Counted from the stretch's first letter, positions 3,510 to 12,021 are shown. The stretch: DNA of 64,000 nt from IMGVR_UViG_3300042317_001568:141011-205010, one strand, 5' to 3'. Notes: generated by a model from the letters alone, not told the origin. Numbers and translations: made by a program.

Positions 3510-4724
3510 GTGGCAGATAGTGTTTTTGAACAAGTCGATCAGTTTGTGCTGCACTCTTCCGCGCCGACAGTTCCGAAAGAGGACGTATTGTCGGCGCAAG
3601 AGCAGCTCACCTTTGTGACGTCGCTTATTGACTTCTGGAAGCAGGTACCTAAAGCCTGTCGCGCTCAGTTGCAACGCGTGTCTGAAAGTATTTCGCAGCT
3701 TGATTTCCCACTAATTGGTGGAGATTTTTACTCGGCATTGTTTTCTAGCGAGCGGATTGCCAGCGCAGAGAAGAAATACGGTTTGTCGCAGGAAGAGGTT
3801 TTTGCTGCGTTGCTGTACGCGCTGCAGCTGTTTTTGATGCGGTCTGACCCAAAGACGGCGGTTATCGATGACTTGTGGAAACTGGTTGTAATTGCGCTGG
3901 AGAAAGCGGCCAACAGAAACAAGCCGACCAACGAGCCCGAGCTGTACAACGAGCGCATGGTGTCTCGGGTATTTAAACACCGCAAACAAACCATTGCGTC
4001 GTTGGGCGCCGTCAACGCCGAGTATGTGTATTTTGAAACCCCGGTAGCCGACGACAAACATGGGCCAGAGCTCCGCGGACTGGCATTTATTTCTCGCACT
4101 GATTTGCCAAAAGCAAAGCAGCCTGCTTTCGCCAATAAGCTTTTTGTGTTGCTCGAAACCGGCGAGCACATTATTGTCGAGACAAATGCTTCAAACCTAA
4201 GCCGCCACGCCGATCCCGAAGCCTACGAGAAAATTCCGGCGAGCTTGTTGCTGCAGGCGGTAATTGCGGCGCCACTGATGGTTCGCATGGGCGTTATTAC
4301 TCGGTCTCAGGCTGATACTATCGCAGAAACGTTTGGTGAGTTTATTGCGCCTGTAACAGCAGAGATTATTGCTGACACGGCGTCCATGCTGCCGATTGAA
4401 CAGGTGTTTGTGCGGGCGCACGCCAACACGGCTTATGCCGGGCACGTTACTGGACCCAACGGAGCCGAGGTGCGGTTTCCCGCACTAAGCATCGACGACA
4501 CCAATCAGCTCGCTTTTGTGTTGCGCGCGCGGATTACGCCGAGCAGCTATTACTTGGTATCTAGTCTGGTGGCGGGCGGAGACGACTCTCCCGATGTACC
4601 CATCATGAAAAATGACTACCCAAGACAGCTGTCTCCATACGGCGTATACTTATTTCCAACGTCGCAGGATTTGTTCGTGTTGTCGGCTTTTCCGCACAAC
4701 TTTATTCTTGGCCCCGAGGGATAG
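3510..4724 (+). CDS. hypothetical protein
   Basis: 404-aa ORF starting 1 nt after the upstream stop. Confidence 0.7.
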   Translation: MADSVFEQVDQFVLHSSAPTVPKEDVLSAQEQLTFVTSLIDFWKQVPKACRAQLQRVSESISQLDFPLIGGDFYSALFSSERIASAEKKYGLSQEEVFAALLYALQLFLMRSDPKTAVIDDLWKLVVIALEKAANRNKPTNEPELYNERMVSRVFKHRKQTIASLGAVNAEYVYFETPVADDKHGPELRGLAFISRTDLPKAKQPAFANKLFVLLETGEHIIVETNASNLSRHADPEAYEKIPASLLLQAVIAAPLMVRMGVITRSQADTIAETFGEFIAPVTAEIIADTASMLPIEQVFVRAHANTAYAGHVTGPNGAEVRFPALSIDDTNQLAFVLRARITPSSYYLVSSLVAGGDDSPDVPIMKNDYPRQLSPYGVYLFPTSQDLFVLSAFPHNFILGPEG

Positions 4725-4729
4725 GCGGC

Positions 4730-5344
4730 ATGTATTTGTTCATGGACACGGAAACCGGCGGGCTAACGCCAGACCGTAGTTTGCTTACGGCGTCGTTTAT
4801 TCCGGTGGACAAGAATTTCGGCATTATGCCGCTTACGTATTTCGATCCGCTAATGCAGCGGACAGAGCACGCTGAGTGCGGCCTGTATCTGGCTATTAAG
4901 CCGGAGACGTACGTCATCGACCAAGAGGCGTTAGCCGTTAACAAAATCAACATCGCCGAGCACGAGCGCGACGCGGTACCGGTCGACATGGCTCGCCGGC
5001 TGATCAACAGTTTTGTAGAAGCCGCGCGCAAAGAATCCGGCAAAAAGTATCTGGTCCCCGCCGGTCACAATGTGGCGTTTGACGTGCAGTTTTTGAAAGC
5101 GCAAATCTTCACTGAAGAAGAGTGGGACCGGTTGTTCACGTACCCGTTTCTGGACACAGCGTCTGCTGCGCGGTTCCTCAACGCAGCTGGGGCTATTGAC
5201 GGCGGGTACTCGCTGACCACGATGCGGTCCAAGTTTTTGAGCGCCGATTTTGGAGTTGCGCACAACGCAGAAGTGGATAATCTGACGACTATCGCGTTGG
5301 CTCAAAAGCTCACTGAATTCGTTCAACGGCGCGCCAGCGCCTAA
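4730..5344 (+). CDS. DEDDh 3'-5' exonuclease (DnaQ-like)
   Basis: ExoI MDTETGGL, ExoII GHNVAFD, ExoIII HNAEVD. Confidence 0.9.
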   Translation: MYLFMDTETGGLTPDRSLLTASFIPVDKNFGIMPLTYFDPLMQRTEHAECGLYLAIKPETYVIDQEALAVNKINIAEHERDAVPVDMARRLINSFVEAARKESGKKYLVPAGHNVAFDVQFLKAQIFTEEEWDRLFTYPFLDTASAARFLNAAGAIDGGYSLTTMRSKFLSADFGVAHNAEVDNLTTIALAQKLTEFVQRRASA

Positions 5345-5448
5345 ATCGCGTCAAACTTCCGCGATCTGGCACCCTAGTCATGAGTGGGTCATAACCGTGA
5401 AGCGTACAGCAAAGAAAGGTGATACTCCAATTTGTGTGTGCGAAGCCG

Positions 5449-5457
5449 TGGTATAAA
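5449..5457 (+). promoter_or_regulatory. extended -10 element upstream of tRNA-Gln
   Basis: TG-n-TATAAA, 20 nt before the tRNA start. Confidence 0.4.
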
Positions 5458-5477
5458 AGGACGTTACCGCGCGAAGC

Positions 5478-5548
5478 TGCCCGATGGTGTAACGGTAGCA
5501 CAAGAGATTTTGGCTCTCTTAGTCTAGGTTCGAATCCTAGTCGGGCAT
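5478..5548 (+). tRNA. trnQ: tRNA-Gln(UUG), CCA not encoded
   Basis: acceptor TGCCCGA/TCGGGCA; D arm GGTGTAACGGTAGCAC; anticodon stem AGAGA/TCTCT with loop TTTTGGC; T arm CTAGG-TTCGAAT-CCTAG. Confidence 0.95.
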
Positions 5549-5549
5549 T
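5525..5549 (+). repeat. 25-bp direct repeat, copy 1 (tRNA 3' end)
   Basis: TAGGTTCGAATCCTAGTCGGGCATT, identical to 6108-6132. Confidence 0.95.
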
Positions 5550-5561
5550 CGGAGGTTTTAA

Positions 5562-6110
5562 ATGAGTACTAGCGTAAATCTTTGGGATCAGCTAGACGTA
5601 CCGCACAAAGGTTGGATTTTTTTAGACGTTATAGATACGGAAACAGCAGAAGCAACCTGCGAGATGTGCGGAAACGAGCGTATTCGTTATGTACATATGA
5701 TGGCGCACGCAGATTACGCCGCACGACTCAGTGTTGGTTGTGTGTGCGCCGAAAAAATGGCAGATGATTATGTTAACCCGCGTCGTCGCGAACGTAAATT
5801 GCGCAATGCTGCTGCAAAACGCATTCGCGACAAAAAACGTGAACTTGAAAATAAAGAAACGCGGCGACAACAAATACTTGACGCGGTGTGGCAAGAATCA
5901 AAAAACGGCAATCCGTATTTGCGCATAAATCTATACTACAGCGACAGTAGCCACATCTGGACGCGAAAAATTCACGCTGTAGTAGTCAAATCAAAATTTA
6001 CAGCTTCTTGGGCATTCTCTGTCGATGGCGTGTTTTCATCGTATAAGCACGCCAGCATAAACGCGGCGATGGCGGCGGCAAAACAAGAAATTTTGCGCAA
6101 ATTTGTTTAG
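5562..6110 (+). CDS. zinc-finger-like hypothetical protein inside a tRNA-flanked cassette
   Basis: CEMCG...H...H...CVC motif; GGAGG SD; its stop codon TAG is the first 3 nt of repeat copy 2. Confidence 0.8.
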   Translation: MSTSVNLWDQLDVPHKGWIFLDVIDTETAEATCEMCGNERIRYVHMMAHADYAARLSVGCVCAEKMADDYVNPRRRERKLRNAAAKRIRDKKRELENKETRRQQILDAVWQESKNGNPYLRINLYYSDSSHIWTRKIHAVVVKSKFTASWAFSVDGVFSSYKHASINAAMAAAKQEILRKFV

Positions 6111-6132
6111 GTTCGAATCCTAGTCGGGCATT
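6108..6132 (+). repeat. 25-bp direct repeat, copy 2 (att-like)
   Basis: identical to 5525-5549. Confidence 0.95.
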
Positions 6133-6159
6133 GGTTTAATTTTACTTTTGGAGAACAAC

Positions 6160-6480
6160 ATGATTAAAAACAATTTGGTGTACCAGTCTTATCGTTCGGC
6201 TAAGCAAAAGACAGAGCGGCGTTTAGTTGGATTGCCGCTGCGTAAGCATTTAATCAAAAACATTTGTCGCGTCATGAAGGAGTATGCTCCGCTTGTTGGC
6301 GTAACTCAAAAAGAAATTGCTGCCGACATTAAGGCTATTCAGGCGTGGAAACTTGATGCGGTGACAGATTGGTACTTCCTATACGACGCGCTTGGGTCTT
6401 CTTCTCGCCTTGATATTGAACTGCTTGATTTTTGTTCTTATGCGCGGTCGCGCTGGTGGTACAACCAACTTTCGCGGTAG
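6160..6480 (+). CDS. hypothetical protein
   Basis: GGAG SD then ATG 6160. Confidence 0.65.
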   Translation: MIKNNLVYQSYRSAKQKTERRLVGLPLRKHLIKNICRVMKEYAPLVGVTQKEIAADIKAIQAWKLDAVTDWYFLYDALGSSSRLDIELLDFCSYARSRWWYNQLSR

Positions 6481-6496
6481 AGTATTTTTTGGTTTT

Positions 6497-6638
6497 TGAT
6501 CGGCTCCTCAGTGACAGCGACTAAGGCGGCGCTTTGGTGCGCCGGTACCCAACAGCCACGTGCTTGACCTAACCCGACGGGGTGAACTACACAGCATGCC
6601 GGTGAGGTACATAGCGGGTGCAATTCCCGCCCGATCAA
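6497..6638 (+). ncRNA. tRNA-like structured RNA with enlarged core (~142 nt)
   Basis: acceptor-like stem TGATCGG(6497-6503)/CCGATCA(6631-6637) directly after T-arm-like GCGGG-TGCAATT-CCCGC (6614-6630); intergenic. Confidence 0.6.
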
Positions 6639-6689
6639 TTCGGAGGCTGACGTTAGAGTTACAAAAATTTGTTTAATAAGGACGCAGTA

Positions 6690-6998
6690 ATGACATTCAA
6701 CGAACTGGAAGAGAAGGTACTGCAGTGGGCGATAGACCGAAAGATCATCCCCAACAGCAATCCGACAGCGCAACTCATGAAGACGATGTCGGAGTTGGGC
6801 GAGTTAGCCGACGCCACGCTCAAGGACAATCGACACGGCATTGTGGACGGCGTTGGCGACGTGCTGGTGACACTGATTCTGTACTGCAAATTACAAGAAA
6901 TCAGCGTAGCGGCATGTTTAGGCCGTGCCTACGATGAGATTAAAGATAGAAAAGGCACTTTAACACCAGAAGGTATTTTTGTGAAGGAGACAGCATGA
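6690..6998 (+). CDS. MazG-like nucleotide pyrophosphohydrolase
   Basis: QLMKTMSELGELADA...DGVGDVLVTL matches the ExxE...D..D NTP-PPase pattern. Confidence 0.85.
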   Translation: MTFNELEEKVLQWAIDRKIIPNSNPTAQLMKTMSELGELADATLKDNRHGIVDGVGDVLVTLILYCKLQEISVAACLGRAYDEIKDRKGTLTPEGIFVKETA

Positions 6999-7273
6999 TC
7001 GATCCAAATAAAGTAATAAATGACTGCGAGCAAGCCGATCATATTATGCAGGATCAACGGGCCGAAATTGATCGGCTCAAGGAAGCCATCCGCCGCCTCG
7101 CTGACCAAGACGCCACGCTCTCGGTGTGCAACGGCAACGTGATTGTGACGATGGACGCCACTCTCACCGACGAGGAGCGGGAGGCGGTGGAGTGGGCGGA
7201 AGAACTCGCTGGAAACTGCGAAGAGTTTGATCGCGTGAACACGCTGCGCAACCTACTAGAGAGAACGAAGTGA
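6995..7273 (+). CDS. hypothetical protein with TLTDEEREA module
   Basis: ATGA overlap with upstream gene; C-terminal TLTDEEREAV...TLRNLLER. Confidence 0.75.
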   Translation: MIDPNKVINDCEQADHIMQDQRAEIDRLKEAIRRLADQDATLSVCNGNVIVTMDATLTDEEREAVEWAEELAGNCEEFDRVNTLRNLLERTK

Positions 7274-7533
7274 CTAAAACACAATGTCAAGTTCCGTCGC
7301 AAATAAACGTGACGCTCACAGACGAGCAGCGAGAGTCATTGCGGGCGTCCTTGTCAGGCGGTGCAGGAGGCCCGCTGGTTCATCCACCGCAGCCCGCGCT
7401 CACCGCCGATGAGTGGGAAGCCGTCTGGCTGGCAATCGGAATGTTCGCGGAAGGGCCGGAGCATATCAAGCGACATGAGGAAATGGCCGACACGCTGCGC
7501 AACCTGCTGGAGCGGCTAGGAGGTGCAAAGTGA
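7270..7533 (+). CDS. hypothetical protein with TLTDEEREA module
   Basis: GTGA overlap; TLTDEQRES and LTADEWEAV...TLRNLLERL. Confidence 0.7.
   Translation: MTKTQCQVPSQINVTLTDEQRESLRASLSGGAGGPLVHPPQPALTADEWEAVWLAIGMFAEGPEHIKRHEEMADTLRNLLERLGGAK
7283..7308 (+). repeat. imperfect 26-bp direct repeat, copy 1
   Basis: AATGTCAAGTTCCGTCGCAAATAAAC; 22/26 identical to 9250-9275. Confidence 0.6.
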
Positions 7534-7838
7534 GCGACACAAACAAGCCTGTGGCATGGGCAGTGACGCCGAACGGCCGCGACGAGGAGATTGACTGCGA
7601 GTTCATCTACCCTGACGCCGCGACTGCCGGAGACGTTGCGCTGGGTTGCGATGGCGTGGTGTTGCCGCTCTTTCGTCCGAAGCCACCGCCTGCCACCACG
7701 CTCACCGACGAGGAGCGGGAGGCGTTGAATCGCGGAATCGACGCGTTGTACGGCGTGGAGGACGTATCGGATGGTGCGTGCCGCAGAGACGATGCCGCAG
7801 CGAGGACGCTCCTCGCGTTACTGGAACGACTGAAGTGA
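7530..7838 (+). CDS. hypothetical protein with KPVAW and TLTDEEREA modules
   Basis: GTGA overlap; stop codon overlaps attC-like site 1. Confidence 0.75.
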   Translation: MSDTNKPVAWAVTPNGRDEEIDCEFIYPDAATAGDVALGCDGVVLPLFRPKPPPATTLTDEEREALNRGIDALYGVEDVSDGACRRDDAAARTLLALLERLK

Positions 7839-7882
7839 GAACGATGCGATCTGCGGCGCAGTCCCCTCAATCGCGTGGTTCT
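7838..7882 (-). mobile_element. attC-like site 1 (degenerate or hybrid)
   Basis: AGAAC-GATGC-GATCTGC...CCTCAATC-GCGTG-GTTCT; ends and GCGAT/ATCGC pair, inner arms mismatch. Confidence 0.55.
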
Positions 7883-7896
7883 GGAGACACACACAC

Positions 7897-8064
7897 ATGA
7901 CAATCACTCAAATAATCGGTGCTGCACTGATCGCATCCCCCTTTGCGGGCGTTGCGGTGTTGTGCCACATGCACGGCGGCTGGCCCGCCGTTGCTGTAGT
8001 GTTTGGGGCGAGCGGAGCCGTTGTTGCTGTTATCGCACTTGGGTGCCGACTTCTGGTTCCATAA
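7897..8064 (+). CDS. 55-aa hydrophobic cassette protein (not in ORF track)
   Basis: GGAG SD; MTITQIIGAALIASPFAGVAVLCHMHGGWPAVAVVFGASGAVVAVIALGCRLLVP; stop TAA lies in ATAAC of site 2. Confidence 0.7.
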   Translation: MTITQIIGAALIASPFAGVAVLCHMHGGWPAVAVVFGASGAVVAVIALGCRLLVP

Positions 8065-8105
8065 CGCTTGCGATCTGCGGCTCGTCCGCAGCATCGCGTG
8101 GTTCT
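8061..8105 (-). mobile_element. attC-like site 2
   Basis: ATAAC-GCTTGC-GATCTGC-GGCTCGTCC-GCAGCATC-GCGTG-GTTCT; hairpin with one extrahelical base. Confidence 0.8.
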
Positions 8106-8127
8106 CTCAGGGAGTCTGGTGCGATCA

Positions 8128-8316
8128 ATGAGATGGTTCATCTGCAAAAACCACAGCGGCGAGAAGTTTGTGAAACGCTGGTACGCGATCTGGCCGGTGA
8201 CGGTCAAGGGTGAGACGCGATGGTTGGAGTGGGTCGCCGTGGAATACCGGAGGGTGTTCTACGTCGGCAAGGATCACATTCAGCACGGGGAGCAGGCGGT
8301 TCGGTTTGTGAGTTGA
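8128..8316 (+). CDS. 62-aa Trp-rich cassette protein
   Basis: GGGAG SD; MRWFICKNHSGEKFVKRWYAIWPV...; ends 1 nt before site 3. Confidence 0.7.
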   Translation: MRWFICKNHSGEKFVKRWYAIWPVTVKGETRWLEWVAVEYRRVFYVGKDHIQHGEQAVRFVS

Positions 8317-8317
8317 G

Positions 8318-8403
8318 AGAACACGCAGGATCAGGAGCGGCGAACAATGAGCGATGACAACACGCAGGACGGTGCCGAGCCGTCTCCTGCATCCGCTGGT
8401 TAT
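8318..8403 (-). mobile_element. attC-like site 3
   Basis: AGAAC-ACGCAG-GATCAGG...CCTGCATC-CGCTG-GTTAT; the start codon of the next ORF lies in its loop. Confidence 0.8.
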
Positions 8404-8580
8404 CCGCAGCAAGTCGCCTGCGACGCTTGCGGTGGTTCTGGAAAGTTCTGCGTAGGGGAGACATTGGTCAGCCGCGACATGGCGATAGACGCAGAGTGTC
8501 CGTCGCTTGAGGGCACGCACTACGAGTACGAGTTCGCGCGGTGCCCGGCTTGCGGCGGCGACGGTTGGGTTCTTGGATAA
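8347..8580 (+). CDS. 77-aa CxxCxGxG zinc-finger cassette protein
   Basis: CDACGGSG and CPACGGDG (DnaJ-type zinc motif); stop codon lies in site 4. Confidence 0.75.
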   Translation: MSDDNTQDGAEPSPASAGYPQQVACDACGGSGKFCVGETLVSRDMAIDAECPSLEGTHYEYEFARCPACGGDGWVLG

Positions 8581-8628
8581 CGACAAGGATAAGCGGCGGC
8601 TTCGCCGTCCGCTTCATCCGCTGGTTCT
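8577..8628 (-). mobile_element. attC-like site 4
   Basis: ATAAC-GACAAG-GATAAGCGG-CGGC-TTC-GCCG-T-CCGCTT-C-ATC-CGCTG-GTTCT; two extrahelical bases. Confidence 0.85.
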
Positions 8629-8647
8629 GCGTCAAACGAGGTGAGAC

Positions 8648-8893
8648 ATGAGAACGCTTGAAGACGAAGAAGACCCCTTCATTCCGACTCCGTCAGAGGC
8701 TCGTCGCTTCGGGCGGCTGGACAAGATGCCGGAACATAAGCGACTGAAGGCGACAGTGCGGATGTTTTTGGATGCGATCAGGTGTGTGCCGATGCGGGCG
8801 ATTGACTGCGATCAACTTCTGGTAAGTGAACTGTTGAACCGTCTGCACGATGAAACAAAACCAAACCGCAAGAAGAAGCGTCGCGCAAAGTGA
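8648..8893 (+). CDS. 81-aa cassette protein
   Basis: GAGGTG SD; sits between sites 4 and 5. Confidence 0.7.
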   Translation: MRTLEDEEDPFIPTPSEARRFGRLDKMPEHKRLKATVRMFLDAIRCVPMRAIDCDQLLVSELLNRLHDETKPNRKKKRRAK

Positions 8894-8896
8894 CGC

Positions 8897-8981
8897 AGAA
8901 CGCCAGAGATGAATGGCTGCGAACACAGGAGCATGACACATGACAGACGAAAATGAGCAGTCCATTCCATCGCGTGGTTCT
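8897..8981 (-). mobile_element. attC-like site 5
   Basis: AGAAC-GCCAGA-GATGAATGG-CTGC...GCAG-T-CCATTC-C-ATC-GCGTG-GTTCT; two extrahelical bases. Confidence 0.85.
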
Positions 8982-9251
8982 CACGGGGAGCCGTGCGCGT
9001 GGGCTGTGGTGCTTGCTGACGGCCAGCGAATCTACGATGTCTATGGCATCGAAGAAGAGGCCAAGGCGATTGACGAGGCAGTTACTGGGAATCACGGCAT
9101 CGTCCCGCTCTACCGCTCTCCCACGCTCACCGACGAGGAACGCGAGGCGCTTGCTGAAGCGATTGGAGCCTACAACGACAACGACGACGACGAGGAATGT
9201 GCTAAGATTGCGGCCACGCTTCACGGCTTACTGAAGCGGCTGGGCGGTTAA
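8940..9251 (+). CDS. hypothetical protein with EPCAW and TLTDEEREA modules
   Basis: starts inside site 5; paralogous to 7530-7838. Confidence 0.75.
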   Translation: MTDENEQSIPSRGSHGEPCAWAVVLADGQRIYDVYGIEEEAKAIDEAVTGNHGIVPLYRSPTLTDEEREALAEAIGAYNDNDDDEECAKIAATLHGLLKRLGG

Positions 9252-9275
9252 TGTCAAGTTTTGTTGCAAAAAAAC
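9250..9275 (+). repeat. imperfect 26-bp direct repeat, copy 2
   Basis: AATGTCAAGTTTTGTTGCAAAAAAAC. Confidence 0.6.
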
Positions 9276-9287
9276 TAGGAGCAACTA

Positions 9288-9530
9288 ATGACCGACAAAG
9301 AGAAAAACCGCAGTTACATAACAGCATGTGTTTCGTGCGGCGGGCGTATTCAGGTCACAAACGGCGTCAGTGGCAGGCACGAATGCTCTAAACGGCATGA
9401 CGCCGCGCAAAAAGCTGCCGACACGCGGGCCTACGATGACGTGCCAACGCGGCGAAAACAATCCCTACTGACGCGGCTTTCAACCGGGTTTAAAATGCTG
9501 GCCGAAAAAGAAGACGACGACCCCGAGTGA
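9288..9530 (+). CDS. small zinc-binding hypothetical protein
   Basis: AGGAG SD; CVSCG...HECSKRH. Confidence 0.65.
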   Translation: MTDKEKNRSYITACVSCGGRIQVTNGVSGRHECSKRHDAAQKAADTRAYDDVPTRRKQSLLTRLSTGFKMLAEKEDDDPE

Positions 9531-9602
9531 CCTGTCGCAAAAACGGAAAAATAGCGACAAGTTTTGGCAATATGTCGCCGGTAACAACATCAGGAGGATA
9601 AC

Positions 9603-9803
9603 GTGACCGACAAAGAAATTGAGCAAAAGTTGAGTTTGTGGGGAGCCGGCCGGCCAAAGACCGCCGAGGGGCAGTTAGCCTTGCAAGCCGCAGACGTTAT
9701 TTCCAAACTTCGTGCCGATCTGAAATATGAGCGCGCCCGCGCTGATTTGAATGACCACACTGAAGAATTAAGAGAACTGTACGCAAAAAATAAGGCGCAA
9801 TAA
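9603..9803 (+). CDS. hypothetical protein
   Basis: AGGAGG SD, GTG start, TAATG coupling to next gene. Confidence 0.65.
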   Translation: MTDKEIEQKLSLWGAGRPKTAEGQLALQAADVISKLRADLKYERARADLNDHTEELRELYAKNKAQ

Positions 9804-10201
9804 TGAGTCCAGAACTTGAACAACAACTGATCAAAAAATACCCTGCGCTATTTCAAGATACAGACAAACCGGCAACGGAAAGTCTGATGTGCTTTGGCTG
9901 CGAGTGCCGTGACGGCTGGTACAACATTATTGAGAGCGCGTGCGGAATCATTTCTCACTACATCGAGCAACGGCGAAAAACAAACGACCTTTCGTCATTT
10001 CGCTGGATGCAGATTAAAGAAAAATTCGGCACGCTGCGGCTGTATCACTCCGGCGACGCAGACGAATACATTTTGGGTGTAACTGACATGGCGGAAGACC
10101 TTTCCGGTTCTGTTTGTGAAGTGTGCGGAAATGTTGGCCAGCTGTGCGGTACTGGGTGGTATCAAACACTCTGCCCTGAGCACGAAAAGCTTCTTCCGTG
10201 A
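9803..10201 (+). CDS. phage hypothetical protein with C-terminal zinc motif
   Basis: GWYNII...QIKEKFGTLRLY...CEVCG...TLCPEH. Confidence 0.75.
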   Translation: MSPELEQQLIKKYPALFQDTDKPATESLMCFGCECRDGWYNIIESACGIISHYIEQRRKTNDLSSFRWMQIKEKFGTLRLYHSGDADEYILGVTDMAEDLSGSVCEVCGNVGQLCGTGWYQTLCPEHEKLLP

Positions 10202-10267
10202 TGGCGGTTATCGGCAAAAGCTGGTAGAATATGCCCGAGGAATTTTGCCGTGTTTAGTGCCGCACAC

Positions 10268-10831
10268 ATGTCAAAAGCCGAGTTGGATTTTATTCGTTTG
10301 TACGTGCAGATCACGCACAAACGCTTTGCGGCATTGCAGGCCGTGTTGAGCTTGGCGCATCCAGACAATCTGGCGCTTTTGGACATGGTGCACGCTACAG
10401 AATTGGTAGCGCACATGGAGCGGCTACAAAACGATTTTGACGGGCAGATACAGCAACTCCAGTTAAAACACAATATTCCGTCTAAACGTTTGCCGCCTGC
10501 CCCGCCAACAAATGAGCAACTGGCCGACATTGTTGTCATGTCATTTTTCAAAGTTGTCGGCGTAATGAACGCGACAAACGGTTTGATGGCAAAGACAAAA
10601 CAAAACGGGTGGTTTAGCGGTAAACCCAAAGAGTGGAATGATCTTTTCGACAAGCTGGCGACCGACTTACCCGAAAACCAAATGGATTCGGCGCTGTCGC
10701 CTTATCTAAAATCTGTCGCCAAGTTTTTTCCAAAATATTATCCCCCCGGGAACTGGTCAAAGTTGTTTCCGCCTCCGCAGCAAGAATTTTACGAAGACGA
10801 CGAATACGACGAAGAGTGGGACAACGAATAG
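10268..10831 (+). CDS. hypothetical protein with acidic tail
   Basis: ORF ending FYEDDEYDEEWDNE; start uncertain. Confidence 0.65.
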   Translation: MSKAELDFIRLYVQITHKRFAALQAVLSLAHPDNLALLDMVHATELVAHMERLQNDFDGQIQQLQLKHNIPSKRLPPAPPTNEQLADIVVMSFFKVVGVMNATNGLMAKTKQNGWFSGKPKEWNDLFDKLATDLPENQMDSALSPYLKSVAKFFPKYYPPGNWSKLFPPPQQEFYEDDEYDEEWDNE

Positions 10832-10839
10832 GAGGGCCT

Positions 10840-12021
10840 ATGCGGCCGTTGTTTGTTTTTTGTGCTGATTTGCATTTGGAAGATGGCGCTTGGACTTCTC
10901 GGATAAACATCTACGGCGACGCGTATTACAGTTTTAAGCAGATCGTAGACCACTGCATTGAGCACAAACTGCCGCTCATACTTGGCGGCGACGTGCTGGA
11001 AAAGAAAAGCAATGCGGCGCGTCCAATTGCAAAACTGTGCGCCGAGCTGACCCGCATGCAGGACGCCAAACTCCCGGTGTACTACATTCAGGGTAATCAC
11101 GAATATGATCGCTATGCGCCGTGGCTAAGCGTGCACCCGTGGCCGACGCACATGCATAACCTCACAGTGGTGTTCGACAACGTCAGCGTGCACGGCATCG
11201 ATTGGTTACCAAAGGGAGAAATTCAAAAAGCGCTCAAAGATGTTCCGGCGACTACAGCCGTACTTGTCACGCATCAGGTGTGGCAAGATTTTATGGGCAC
11301 CGTTGGGCGAACCGAATGCGATTTGTCGGAGGTGCACTACGCACACACAGTCCTCGCCGGTGACTTTCACGTTACAAAAGTAGCTGAAGGTACAAACGCG
11401 CAAGGAAAACCGATTCGCATGTTGTCTCCGGGTTCAACTGCTATGCAAGACATCGGCGAAGAACCCGAGAAGTTTTTCTTCGTTATTTGTGTTGACGAAG
11501 CGGGCAAAATTGTTTTCGCCCCGCATCGGCTGCAGACACGCAAATTTTTGAGTTATGTTGTTAAAACAGCGGAAGAGCTGGACGAACTGTGCGCCGGCAA
11601 ACTGGCAAACGCTGTTGACCGGGTACTACAGGCGGCCCGGCTTTACGTTCCGCCAGAACTAGCAAAACCACTGGTTCGGGTGAAATTCAACAAAAACCTT
11701 CCGGACGCTTATCTTCGAATCACGACGGCCGGCGCTGACATAGCGCATTTGTTTTGCGACGCCATTGCGGATCGTGACGATGAGAACAAAGACCGCCCCG
11801 CCCGCCCGCGAGATGAAACAAAAAACGACTTACTGCACGCAATCGCCGAGCTGCTTGGCGACGACACAGATGAATATCGCTTCGCGCAAGAAATACTTGC
11901 GGCTACAAATCCAAAGCGGCTCGTTGAGTCGCACCTACACGAATATGTGAAAGGGGCAGGCAATGCAGCTATTACGGCTGGAAGTTCAGAACTGGGTGCA
12001 CCACCGGAAACGGGTTTGTGA
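10840..12021 (+). CDS. sbcD: Mre11/SbcD-like metallophosphoesterase nuclease
   Basis: ADLHL, GGDV, GNHE, THQ, GDFH motifs; GGAGG SD; adjacent to the ATPase. Confidence 0.9.
   Translation: MRPLFVFCADLHLEDGAWTSRINIYGDAYYSFKQIVDHCIEHKLPLILGGDVLEKKSNAARPIAKLCAELTRMQDAKLPVYYIQGNHEYDRYAPWLSVHPWPTHMHNLTVVFDNVSVHGIDWLPKGEIQKALKDVPATTAVLVTHQVWQDFMGTVGRTECDLSEVHYAHTVLAGDFHVTKVAEGTNAQGKPIRMLSPGSTAMQDIGEEPEKFFFVICVDEAGKIVFAPHRLQTRKFLSYVVKTAEELDELCAGKLANAVDRVLQAARLYVPPELAKPLVRVKFNKNLPDAYLRITTAGADIAHLFCDAIADRDDENKDRPARPRDETKNDLLHAIAELLGDDTDEYRFAQEILAATNPKRLVESHLHEYVKGAGNAAITAGSSELGAPPETGL

What the first reader, a model, noticed from the sequence alone, without database searches (positions are those of the whole stretch)
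5478..6132. Single-gene cassette inserted at the 3' end of the phage's own tRNA-Gln
Seen: the last 25 nt of the tRNA region are repeated exactly at 6108-6132, enclosing only one 182-aa zinc-motif ORF whose stop codon is the first 3 nt of the repeat. Known: tRNA 3' ends are classic tyrosine-integrase att sites. Inference: a minimal ~580-bp integrase-less insertion into a phage tRNA, possibly mobilised in trans.
Basis: partly seen in the sequence, partly recalled or inferred. Interest (0 to 1): 0.62.

Follow-up and report, generated by a model that had tools for sequence, protein, structure and literature searches.

The report
Gene module bounded by tRNA-end repeat
A 583-base module carrying one zinc-protein gene sits between a lake jumbo phage's tRNA-Gln and an exact 25-base copy of that tRNA's end; it is a real gain/loss polymorphism, most likely made by short-homology recombination between related phages rather than by an integrase.

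Summary
tRNA-Gln(UUG) lies at 5478-5548. Its last bases (5525-5549) recur exactly at 6108-6132, 583 nt downstream. Between them is only a 182-aa Cys4 ORF whose stop codon TAG opens the second copy. At least five independent assemblies show the same arrangement.

Relatives of this 205-kb jumbo phage provide "empty sites". In L056 and L095, tRNA-Gln runs straight into the same leader and gene that follow the copy here. Other relatives carry different cargo behind the tRNA, four of them with partial tRNA-3' copies at different left junctions. One such cargo is a GIY-YIG nuclease gene.

The att/integrase reading is weak:
- The genome has no integrase, resolvase, GIY-YIG, HNH or T5orf172 gene.
- The left junctions vary between cargoes.
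- The ORF lost its last 2-4 codons at the joint.
- The joint ends a 23-nt stretch that matches the tRNA anticodon arm in register.

Best reading: a mosaic joint made by homeologous crossover between phages that carry different genes behind tRNA-Gln. The resulting short repeat then allows further shuffling or loss, perhaps stimulated by T-loop-cutting homing nucleases of relatives. This is a new variant of known modular shuffling in phage hyperplastic regions.

The parts
4730..5344 (+). DnaQ/RNase_T-like exonuclease gene (family F3). It is the conserved left frame of the locus.
   Evidence: phrog_192, E 2e-16; weak PF00929 hit. It is syntenic upstream of tRNA-Gln in 14 related loci.
5478..5548 (+). 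tRNA-Gln, anticodon UUG, with no encoded CCA.
   Evidence: ARAGORN; Rfam RF00005, 63.1 bits. It is conserved in about 25 related jumbo-phage loci.
5500..5522 (+). tRNA anticodon-arm to variable-loop stretch that matches the ORF 3' end in register (offset 583).
   Evidence: A 13-mer matches 12/13 to the phage's own tRNA and 13/13 to the L095 tRNA, and is followed by a shared TTTG in relatives' tRNAs.
5525..5549 (+). Repeat copy 1: T-arm, 3' acceptor strand and 2 trailer bases of tRNA-Gln.
   Evidence: Its minus strand contains GATTCGAAC, which matches the published T6 SegB motif RAWTSGAAC (PMC13096335).
5551..5555 (+). Shine-Dalgarno GGAGG of the zinc ORF. It belongs to a leader that recurs after tRNA 3' ends and their copies in relatives.
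5562..6110 (+). 182-aa zinc protein (family F11). It has an N-terminal Cys4 domain, a long helix and a C-terminal sheet-plus-helix domain. Its stop codon lies in copy 2.
   Evidence: 168 homologues at E<=1e-3, none with a Pfam domain on record; the window protein, neighbours and 27 family members have no Pfam match above cut-off and no PHROG match. AF2 model pLDDT 93.5. No convincing fold match: Foldseek E>0.1, best VIA Z 5.3.
6083..6107 (+). ORF 3' end. It contains the in-register homeologous patch (6083-6105) and ends at the recombination joint.
   Evidence: Relatives L003 and L006 continue for 2-4 more codons here.
6108..6132 (+). Repeat copy 2: the displaced tRNA-Gln 3' fragment, contiguous with the leader of the next gene.
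   Evidence: Its right flank aligns with the tRNA-to-leader-to-gene sequence of L056 and L095.
6160..6480 (+). 106-aa gene (family F17). In L056 and L095 it directly follows tRNA-Gln.
   Evidence: (80% and 64% aa identity).
6497..6638 (+). Unclassified tRNA-like structured RNA module: closing stem, a 5' hairpin, and a T-arm-like hairpin.
   Evidence: Fold z -3.3. No ARAGORN or Rfam call. 98.75% identical in L070 and 90% in L072, with unrelated flanks. More relatives with covarying closing stems.
6638..6652 (+). Leader motif ATTCGGAGGCTGACG. In relatives it directly follows tRNA-Gln or tRNA-Met. Here the start codon behind it is destroyed.
6690..6998 (+). MazG-like pyrophosphatase gene (family F14), another shuffled module.
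   Evidence: PF03819, E 4e-5; phrog_1992, E 4e-34. It sits at other positions in L061, L084 and L089.
10250..12021 (+). Right frame of the hypervariable region: the F2 gene (10250-10831) and an SbcD-like Metallophos gene (10816-12021).

Best explanation
The segment 5550-6132 is a mosaic joint in a hyperplastic region of a lake jumbo phage. This region (about 5549-10250) lies between tRNA-Gln and the SbcCD-like genes. It is not an att-type cassette.

Inferred origin: two related phages carried different genes directly behind tRNA-Gln, one the zinc ORF and the other the 6160 gene. They recombined out of register. The 3' end of the zinc ORF paired with the anticodon-arm to variable-loop part of the other phage's tRNA, through a 23-nt homeologous patch consisting of a 13-mer plus TTTG. 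The crossover resolved after TTTG.

That single event:
- removed the ORF's last 2-4 codons,
- gave the ORF a stop codon from the T-stem,
- left a displaced T-arm plus acceptor fragment in front of the second phage's leader and gene.

The resulting 25-29-nt direct repeat is portable homology. Unequal crossover between it and a tRNA-Gln gene moves the module into other backgrounds, and recombination between the two copies deletes it.

T-loop-cutting GIY-YIG-type homing nucleases, encoded at this very site in relatives, probably raise the recombination rate here. The genes are promoterless small ORFs, presumably read from upstream transcription.

Shown: the anatomy, the empty sites, the variable cargo and junctions, and the absence of a recombinase. 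Inferred: the crossover mechanism, the nuclease stimulation and the expression.
For: 1. Empty sites. In L056 and L095 the sequence tRNA-Gln, leader, F17 gene aligns base for base with copy 2, leader, 6160 gene in the window. In L072 the tRNA is directly followed by an 87-aa gene (88.5% aa identity) that in L007 follows the copy after the zinc ORF.

2. The frame is conserved and the interior is shuffled in 26 related loci.

3. Extra tRNA-3' copies occur in 6 loci with four different left junctions. L006 has a stack of two copies plus a remnant, each more decayed the further it lies from the tRNA.

4. The ORF ends FV* at the joint in the window and L007 (YV* in L009). It ends FAPL* in L003 and FAQLA* in L006.

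5. There is an in-register homeologous patch. Only 6 of 9087 control windows score as high, before the register is even counted, and the 13-mer is 13/13 with the L095 tRNA.

6. The genome has no PF00589, PF00239, PF01541, PF13455 or PF01844 hit.

7. Trees disagree. F11 pairs WIN with L009 (81%) and L007 with L006 (82%), while F2 for the same pairs is 30% and 27% and for WIN-L007 is 48%.

8. The window and L007 copies differ at 1 of 29 nt, while third-codon positions of the ORF are only 61% identical. That fits repeated refreshing by recombination with the tRNA.

9. Nuclease genes sit at this site in relatives: GIY-YIG in L080/L088 with a copy that starts inside the T-loop, MUG113/T5orf172 in L052/L067/L075, and GmrSD_N in L074. 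T6 SegB cuts tRNA genes at RAWTSGAAC and drives recombination-dependent rearrangement (PMC13096335). That motif occurs in the window only at the T-loop, at its copy and at one other site.
Against: - No excision product, circle or precise 583-bp deletion was seen in four lake metagenome runs. Only contigs could be laid, and contigs drop rare variants.
- All near-identical assemblies carry the module, so there is no sign of ongoing mobility within this phage species.
- The same ORF-to-copy joint sits in front of three different genes. That needs either recurrent crossovers at the same patch or later exchanges, and neither was shown.
- The strong conservation of the copy could instead mean that it has a function.
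- The empty-site genomes are only moderately related (exonuclease 43% identical or absent), so the polarity, insertion versus deletion, is inferred.
- A host tyrosine integrase acting in trans cannot be excluded. The same tRNA 3' end occurs in many PVC-group bacterial MAGs.
Confidence: 0.5

Rival explanations
1. Site-specific cassette. A promoterless single-ORF circle carries a copy of the tRNA-Gln 3' end as its attP. A tyrosine integrase supplied in trans, by the host or another element, inserts it at the phage tRNA. That regenerates the tRNA and displaces the old 3' end.
For: - The anatomy fits the definition of tDNA islands: a regenerated target plus a displaced fragment mark the ends (PMC4383910).
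- The identity block covers the symmetric T-arm, a common integrase target (from my own knowledge).
- Empty sites exist.
- The L006 stack shows older, more decayed copies further from the tRNA, which looks like tandem accretion.
- The same tRNA 3' end occurs in many bacterial MAGs of the same lake.
Against: - There is no integrase or resolvase in the unit or in the complete 205-kb genome.
- The left junctions differ, and one lies inside the T-loop.
- The ORF is truncated at the joint and an in-register homeology precedes it. A pre-formed attP does not predict either.
- Distant homologues of the ORF are not next to tRNAs.
- No circle junction was seen (a weak test).
Confidence: 0.12
2. The duplication is a direct scar of homing-endonuclease action. 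A SegB-like GIY-YIG enzyme from a co-infecting relative cut the tRNA-Gln T-loop region. Repair copied the donor's tRNA end plus the adjacent gene, then rejoined by microhomology. That duplicated the part of the tRNA on the far side of the cut.
For: - GIY-YIG and T5orf172 genes lie immediately behind tRNA-Gln in relatives. The GIY-YIG gene is itself bounded by a partial copy that starts inside the T-loop.
- The published SegB motif equals the T-loop on the minus strand.
- SegB drives recombination-dependent rearrangements of tRNA regions (PMC13096335; PMC2330249).
Against: - The window genome has no such nuclease.
- The specificity of the relatives' enzymes is unknown.
- The GIY-YIG match is short: 33 residues, 26.4 bits.
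- The joint in the window lies 5' of the T-stem, not in the T-loop.
Confidence: 0.2
3. The second copy is kept because it works, for example as an RNA processing or stability signal (a T-arm hairpin plus trailer) needed to express the downstream gene. Its identity to the tRNA would then reflect selection rather than mobility.
For: - The copy is far better conserved than synonymous sites of the adjoining ORF.
- The copy plus a GGAGG leader recurs in front of several unrelated genes.
- The simple scan reports one terminator-like hairpin in copy 2.
Against: - Copies decay in L006 and L009 (2-4 or more changes), and in L006 the T-stem is broken.
- L003 has no copy at all after the same ORF.
- The number of terminator-like sites is no higher than in shuffled sequence.
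- No RNA data exist (one search lists no RNA runs).
Confidence: 0.13
4. Remnant of a tandem tRNA-Gln duplication. The 5' part of the second gene copy was overprinted by the end of the ORF.
For: 57 nt of similarity at 79% reaches back to the D/anticodon region.
Against: The ORF's C-terminal residues are homologous to those of family members that have no tRNA nearby, so this sequence derives from the ORF. Outside the 13-mer and TTTG, the similarity is at chance level.
Confidence: 0.04
5. Assembly artefact: a mis-join at a repeated tRNA sequence.
For: Logan unitigs break at the repeat, and depth spikes on the tRNA.
Against: The arrangement is identical in at least 5 independent assemblies from three pipelines. 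Single contigs bridge each junction. Diverged relatives L007 and L009 have the same architecture.
Confidence: 0.01

Closest known systems
PeSL-mediated modular shuffling in T4-type phages (Arbiol et al. 2010, PMC2839356; Comeau et al. 2014, PMC4122927)
   Same: Small ORFan genes in a hyperplastic region are flanked by a short repeated intergenic sequence. Relatives differ by precise presence or absence of the ORF with one repeat left behind. The proposed mechanism is recombination between the repeats, which would give mini-circles.
   Different: - The repeat here is a fragment of a tRNA gene (25-29 nt), not a promoter-terminator cassette of about 100 bp.
- No promoter or terminator signal exceeds chance.
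- There are only 2-4 copies per locus, all at one tRNA.
- Mini-circles were not tested.
Genomic islands and prophages integrated in tRNA genes (Islander definition, PMC4383910)
   Same: The tRNA is intact, and a displaced copy of its 3' end marks the far end of the inserted DNA. Empty sites exist in relatives.
   Different: - There is no integrase.
- The cargo is a single 549-bp ORF that is truncated by the joint.
- The target is a phage tRNA.
- The left junctions vary.
Free-standing homing endonucleases in phage tRNA regions (T4/T6 SegB: PMC2330249, PMC13096335)
   Same: GIY-YIG-type genes sit next to tRNA genes in relatives. The T-loop sequence equals the SegB motif. Recombination-dependent rearrangements occur around tRNA genes.
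   Different: The window phage encodes no such enzyme, the cargo is not a nuclease, and no cleavage data exist for this clade.
Integron gene cassettes
   Same: Promoterless single-ORF units are stacked head to tail behind a fixed site, each ending in a short repeated element.
   Different: - There is no IntI.
- The repeat is not an attC-type imperfect palindrome.
- Junction positions vary.
- The ORFs are cut by the joint.

Membership tests
tRNA-targeting integrative element (island, prophage or satellite) | Tyrosine or serine recombinase encoded in the element | tested here: not met
   The only ORF in the unit is the 182-aa zinc protein. PF00589 and PF00239 are absent from the whole 205-kb genome, and the controls were positive.
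tRNA-targeting integrative element (island, prophage or satellite) | Regenerated tRNA plus a displaced 3' fragment as direct repeats at both ends | tested here: met
tRNA-targeting integrative element (island, prophage or satellite) | Empty target site in relatives | tested here: met
   L056 and L095; L072 as the counterpart of L007.
tRNA-targeting integrative element (island, prophage or satellite) | Fixed crossover position, with excised circular form | tested here: inconclusive
   Left junctions differ between cargoes, but each cargo could carry its own attP. No circle or skip joint was seen in contigs of 4 runs, and raw reads were not available.
Integron cassette array | IntI integrase with an attI site, and attC imperfect inverted repeats ending each cassette | tested here: not met
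   No PF00589 hit. The repeat is a tRNA T-arm plus acceptor fragment with one 5-bp hairpin.
PeSL-type mobile regulatory cassette | Repeated motif made of a sigma-70 promoter plus a terminator stem-loop | tested here: not met
   Promoter-like and terminator-like sites in 4600-7200 are no more frequent than in shuffles, and there is no promoter at the repeat.
PeSL-type mobile regulatory cassette | ORFan indels between relatives bounded by the repeated motif, in a hyperplastic region | tested here: met
PeSL-type mobile regulatory cassette | Mini-circles formed by recombination between flanking repeats | not testable with these tools
   Only Logan contigs were available.
SegB-like homing-endonuclease locus | GIY-YIG homing endonuclease gene adjacent to the tRNA gene | tested here: not met
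   Absent from the window genome. Present at the same site in relatives L080/L088, and T5orf172 in L052/L067/L075.
SegB-like homing-endonuclease locus | Target motif RAWTSGAAC in the tRNA gene | tested here: met
   GATTCGAAC occurs at 5528-5536 and 6111-6119 on the minus strand. The 64-kb window has only 3 sites in all. The motif comes from PMC13096335.
SegB-like homing-endonuclease locus | Cleavage of the HEG-less allele and biased inheritance in co-infection | not testable with these tools
   This needs purified enzyme or phage crosses.
HNH / His-Me finger nuclease (considered for the zinc ORF) | Significant match to an HNH profile or fold, with catalytic His and Asn residues | tested here: not met
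   PF01844 matched only 1 of 27 family members, at E 0.074. The Atlas shape hit to an HNH cluster has TM 0.44-0.47. There is no PDB hit.

The most novel reading that the evidence does not exclude
The 3' end of the phage tRNA-Gln works as a dedicated capture site. Promoterless single-gene units, each ending in a T-arm plus acceptor fragment, would be inserted, stacked (as in L006) and excised by a trans-acting enzyme. That enzyme could be a host tRNA-targeting integrase or a T-loop-cutting GIY-YIG nuclease of co-infecting relatives. The units would be expressed by read-through from the tRNA. This would be an integron-like gene-capture system carried on a virus and built on a tRNA gene.
Probability: 0.12. 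Interest if true: 0.8.

Novelty: new variant of a known kind. Interest (0 to 1): 0.45.

Why it matters
Phage genomes gain and lose small accessory genes in hyperplastic regions, but the joints that allow this are known in detail for only a few groups, such as the PeSLs of T4-type phages. In this case, the joints are fragments of the phage's own tRNA gene. One joint can be read base by base: an in-register homeologous patch, a truncated ORF, and a stop codon borrowed from the T-stem.

If the recombination model holds, conserved tRNA sequence serves as portable homology for gene exchange among uncultured lake jumbo phages. It would also connect to recent work showing that tRNA-region homing nucleases drive adaptive rearrangements.

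The locus also gives a family of about 170 uncharacterised zinc proteins a defined mobile context. It also exposes an unclassified tRNA-like RNA module that is nearly identical in divergent phages.

Tried and rejected
- Near-identity search of the phage collection with 4800-7000 found no match.
- The zinc ORF, its neighbours and 27 family members have no Pfam match above cut-off, the window proteins no PHROG match, and a PDB sequence search gave no usable family.
- Foldseek against PDB gave nothing at E<=0.001. VIA-align wide gave a best Z of 5.3, with AP2/GCC-box-like matches at Z 5.0 over 45 residues of the C-terminal domain. That is too weak to name a fold.
- Atlas shape and feature searches found only the protein's own unnamed clusters, plus TM<0.5 rows for UvrD-family and HNH clusters.
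- A third copy suggested in the genome (L002) is simply tRNA-Asn with a similar T-arm.
- A tRNA association of the ORF family in general was rejected: 0 of 39 distant viral loci have a tRNA within 3 kb. Bacterial homologues sit in island-like contexts without tRNAs.
- The metagenome scan for the ORF-to-copy joint returned only the same phage.
- Laying contigs of 4 lake runs showed no 583-bp skip and no circle joint. It showed only other arrangements from co-occurring relatives: a tRNA-end to MazG joint, and a loose end of the L054/L086 type. Raw reads were not available, so absence means little.
- ARAGORN with introns and Rfam did not classify the 6497-6638 element.
- No complex prediction was run, because no binding claim is made.

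Full report
**Observation**

The window is the last 64 kb of a 205,010-bp IMG/VR virus record that CheckV rates as complete. ARAGORN and Rfam both call one tRNA, tRNA-Gln(UUG), at 5478-5548. The 25 bases at 5525-5549 cover the T-arm, the 3' acceptor strand and two trailer bases. They recur exactly at 6108-6132, 583 nt downstream.

The only real ORF between the copies is 5562-6110 (182 aa). Its stop codon TAG is the first triplet of copy 2. My estimate of the chance expectation for an exact 25-mer pair in 64 kb is about 2e-6.

The arrangement is not an assembly artefact:
- It is identical in JGI, ENA and Logan assemblies from at least five samples.
- Individual Logan contigs bridge each junction.
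- Diverged relatives show the same architecture.
- Of the nine phage tRNAs plus the tmRNA, only tRNA-Gln has an extra 3' copy.

**Genomic setting**

About 25 related loci were recovered with an exact 21-nt tRNA probe and through homologues of the ORF. Many come from viral contigs of about 200 kb. They share a frame:
- a small F0 gene,
- usually a DnaQ-like exonuclease,
- tRNA-Gln,
- a hypervariable run of small plus-strand ORFs,
- a roughly 210-aa gene (F2),
- an SbcD-like Metallophos gene,
- in the loci that extend far enough, an SbcC-like gene.

In the window the variable run spans about 5549-10250. The stretch 5400-6500 has a G+C of 0.40-0.49, against 0.52-0.60 for the flanks on either side. 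The same small-gene families occur in different orders and combinations in different phages. These include F4, F5, F8, F9, F10, F13, MazG (F14), F15 to F19 and the zinc ORF (F11).

**Empty sites and alternative cargo**

- In L056 (a 204.6-kb contig) and L095, tRNA-Gln runs straight into the leader (TTGG..TTTTGGA) and the gene that follow copy 2 in the window. That gene is 80% and 64% identical at the protein level. The alignment is collinear from the anticodon arm onward.
- L072 has tRNA-Gln directly followed by an 87-aa gene. In L007 the same gene (88.5% aa identity) follows an exact 29-nt copy placed after a 75-aa ORF plus the zinc ORF.
- L009 has the zinc ORF, then a copy with two changes, then a third kind of downstream gene.
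- L003 has the zinc ORF but no copy.
- L006 has a stack: tRNA, an 86-aa ORF, a copy with 3 changes, a 97-aa ORF, a copy with 4 changes, the zinc ORF, then a 9-12-nt remnant.
- L080 and L088 have a 371-aa ORF followed by a 19-20-nt copy that begins inside the T-loop.

**Why this is probably not an att/integrase cassette**

- The genome has no tyrosine or serine recombinase.
- It also has no GIY-YIG, MUG113/T5orf172 or HNH gene.
- The left edge of the duplicated tRNA piece differs between cargoes: the variable loop, the 5' T-stem, or the T-loop.
- The zinc ORF ends FV* at the joint in the window and L007, and YV* in L009. In L003 and L006 it continues to FAPL* and FAQLA*. The joint therefore cut 2-4 codons, and the T-stem supplies the stop. 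By my reading of the sequence, two of the three frames meet a TAG inside the fragment.
- The 23 nt before the joint (6083-6105) align in register, at offset 583, with the tRNA (5500-5522). A 13-mer matches 12 of 13 bases to the phage's own tRNA and 13 of 13 to the L095 tRNA. Relatives' tRNAs also share the TTTG at the junction.
- This 13-mer encodes conserved residues (KQEIL) that are also present in L006, where no copy adjoins. The similarity therefore predates the joint. Only 6 of 9087 control windows score as high, before the register is counted.

A single out-of-register crossover explains every feature. The partners would be a phage with tRNA followed by the zinc ORF and a phage with tRNA followed by the 6160 gene. 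The crossover would be guided by the homeologous patch and resolved after TTTG.

**What happens afterwards**

The 25-29-nt repeat is itself homology to any tRNA-Gln gene. One unequal crossover in a mixed infection would move the module into another background. Recombination between the two copies would delete it, leaving the empty site and a 583-bp circle.

Two results are consistent with repeated exchange:
- The F11 protein pairs the window with L009 (81%) and L007 with L006 (82%). The F2 protein is 30% and 27% identical in those same pairs, but 48% identical between the window and L007.
- The copies of the window and L007 differ at 1 of 29 bases, while third-codon positions of the adjoining ORF are only 61% identical. 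By my binomial estimate this has a probability of about 1e-5 under neutrality. It could equally reflect selection on the copy, which I keep as a rival.

The closest described process is PeSL-mediated shuffling in T4-type phages, including the proposed mini-circles (PMC2839356). The repeat here is a tRNA fragment, though, and it carries no promoter or terminator signature.

**Role of nucleases (inferred)**

Several relatives carry nuclease-type genes directly behind tRNA-Gln:
- a GIY-YIG protein in L080/L088 (26.4 bits, short match),
- MUG113/T5orf172 proteins in L052, L067 and L075,
- a GmrSD_N protein in L074.

T4 and T6 SegB is a GIY-YIG homing endonuclease of tRNA regions (PMC2330249). In T6 it cuts within tRNA genes at the motif RAWTSGAAC and drives UvsX/UvsY-dependent rearrangements (PMC13096335). 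The minus strand of the T-loop here reads GATTCGAAC. The motif occurs only three times in the 64-kb window, two of them being the T-loop and its copy. Breaks made by such enzymes in mixed infections would make this site a recombination hotspot. The window phage itself has no such gene.

**The cargo**

The zinc protein belongs to a family with at least 168 members at E<=1e-3 in phages and bacteria, none with a Pfam domain on record, and neither the window protein nor 27 family members scanned separately match a Pfam family above its cut-off. Invariant residues include C33, C36, C60, C62, H45 and W8/W18.

The AlphaFold model is confident, with pLDDT 93.5. It shows an N-terminal sheet-plus-helix Cys4 domain, a long helix that is lengthened in this clade, and a C-terminal sheet plus helix. 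No fold match is convincing. The best are AP2/GCC-box-like hits at Z 5.0 over 45 residues.

Distant homologues are never next to tRNAs. Bacterial homologues lie in island-like neighbourhoods with HigB, M78/HTH and Piwi genes. My best guess is a small nucleic-acid-binding accessory protein, held at low confidence. It is not a recombinase by any test I could run.

**Limits**

- Only contigs, not reads, could be laid. Active excision is therefore untested.
- The empty-site genomes are moderately diverged, so the polarity of the event is inferred.
- Whether the shared ORF-to-copy joint arose once or several times is open.
- A host integrase acting in trans is not excluded. The same tRNA 3' end is found in many Planctomycetota and other PVC-group MAGs, including bins from the window's own sample.

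**Verdict**

It is a new variant of a known kind and of moderate interest.

Noticed in passing
window 6497-6638 (+); also L070:1227-1368(-), L072:1177-1318(-), L112:1758-1874, L113:1513-1648, L115:998-1146, L117:7482-7606(-): An unclassified tRNA-like structured RNA. It has a 7-bp closing stem, a 5' hairpin whose loop carries a (G)GACAG(C/T)GAC-type motif, a variable middle of 60-200 nt, and an invariant T-arm-like hairpin (GCGGG-UGCAAUU-CCCGC). It is 98.75% identical between the window and L070 although their exonucleases are only 37% identical, and the flanks are unrelated. The closing stems covary across viral contigs. The elements lie near tRNAs or tmRNA. Rfam 15 and ARAGORN do not call it.
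   Followed up: partly
window 6638-6652; L061, L084, L094, L054, L086 directly after tRNA-Gln; L056 after tRNA-Met: A 15-nt leader, ATTCGGAGGCTGACG, directly follows the 3' end of different tRNAs and of the tRNA-like element in different phages. In the window the start codon behind it has become TAG, so it is a gene-start remnant.
   Followed up: partly
L080 and L088:2679-3794(-); L075:7993-9567(-), L052:3666-5114(-); L074:4171-5508: Nuclease-type genes occupy the position right after tRNA-Gln in relatives: GIY-YIG, MUG113/T5orf172 and GmrSD_N. The GIY-YIG gene's stop codon also lies inside a partial tRNA-3' copy.
   Followed up: partly
window 6995-7273, 7270-7533, 7530-7838, 8940-9251 (+): Four paralogous small genes (family F4) share a motif of the form 'TLTDEEREAL...LLERL'. 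Family members also occur in the variable regions of many relatives.
   Followed up: no
L121, L127, L168, L169, L174, L184, L200 and others (genome contigs): The 21-nt tRNA-Gln T-arm plus acceptor sequence is identical in many Planctomycetota (Pirellulales), Verrucomicrobiota, Lentisphaerota and Kiritimatiellia MAGs. These include bins from the same lake sample id as the window's record. This hints at a PVC-group host, or at mis-binned phage contigs. Depth on the tRNA in lake runs is about 100 times that of the flanks.
   Followed up: no
L104-L108 (Ferruginibacter-like contigs), L109: Bacterial homologues of the zinc protein lie in island-like contexts, between a Piwi-domain (pAgo-like) gene with HigB and M78 genes on one side and DUF6876 on the other. 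No tRNA is nearby.
   Followed up: no
window 6134 joined to 6689, in one contig of run X22: A contig about 93% identical joins a tRNA-Gln 3' end directly to the start of the MazG gene. A loose end at 5555 in run X18 continues into the L054/L086-type leader. Several alternative arrangements therefore co-occur in the same lake.
   Followed up: no
G000:C1:5531-10269: The phage carries a cluster of six tRNAs plus a tmRNA (tag GAHAPALAA) far from the tRNA-Gln locus.
   Followed up: no
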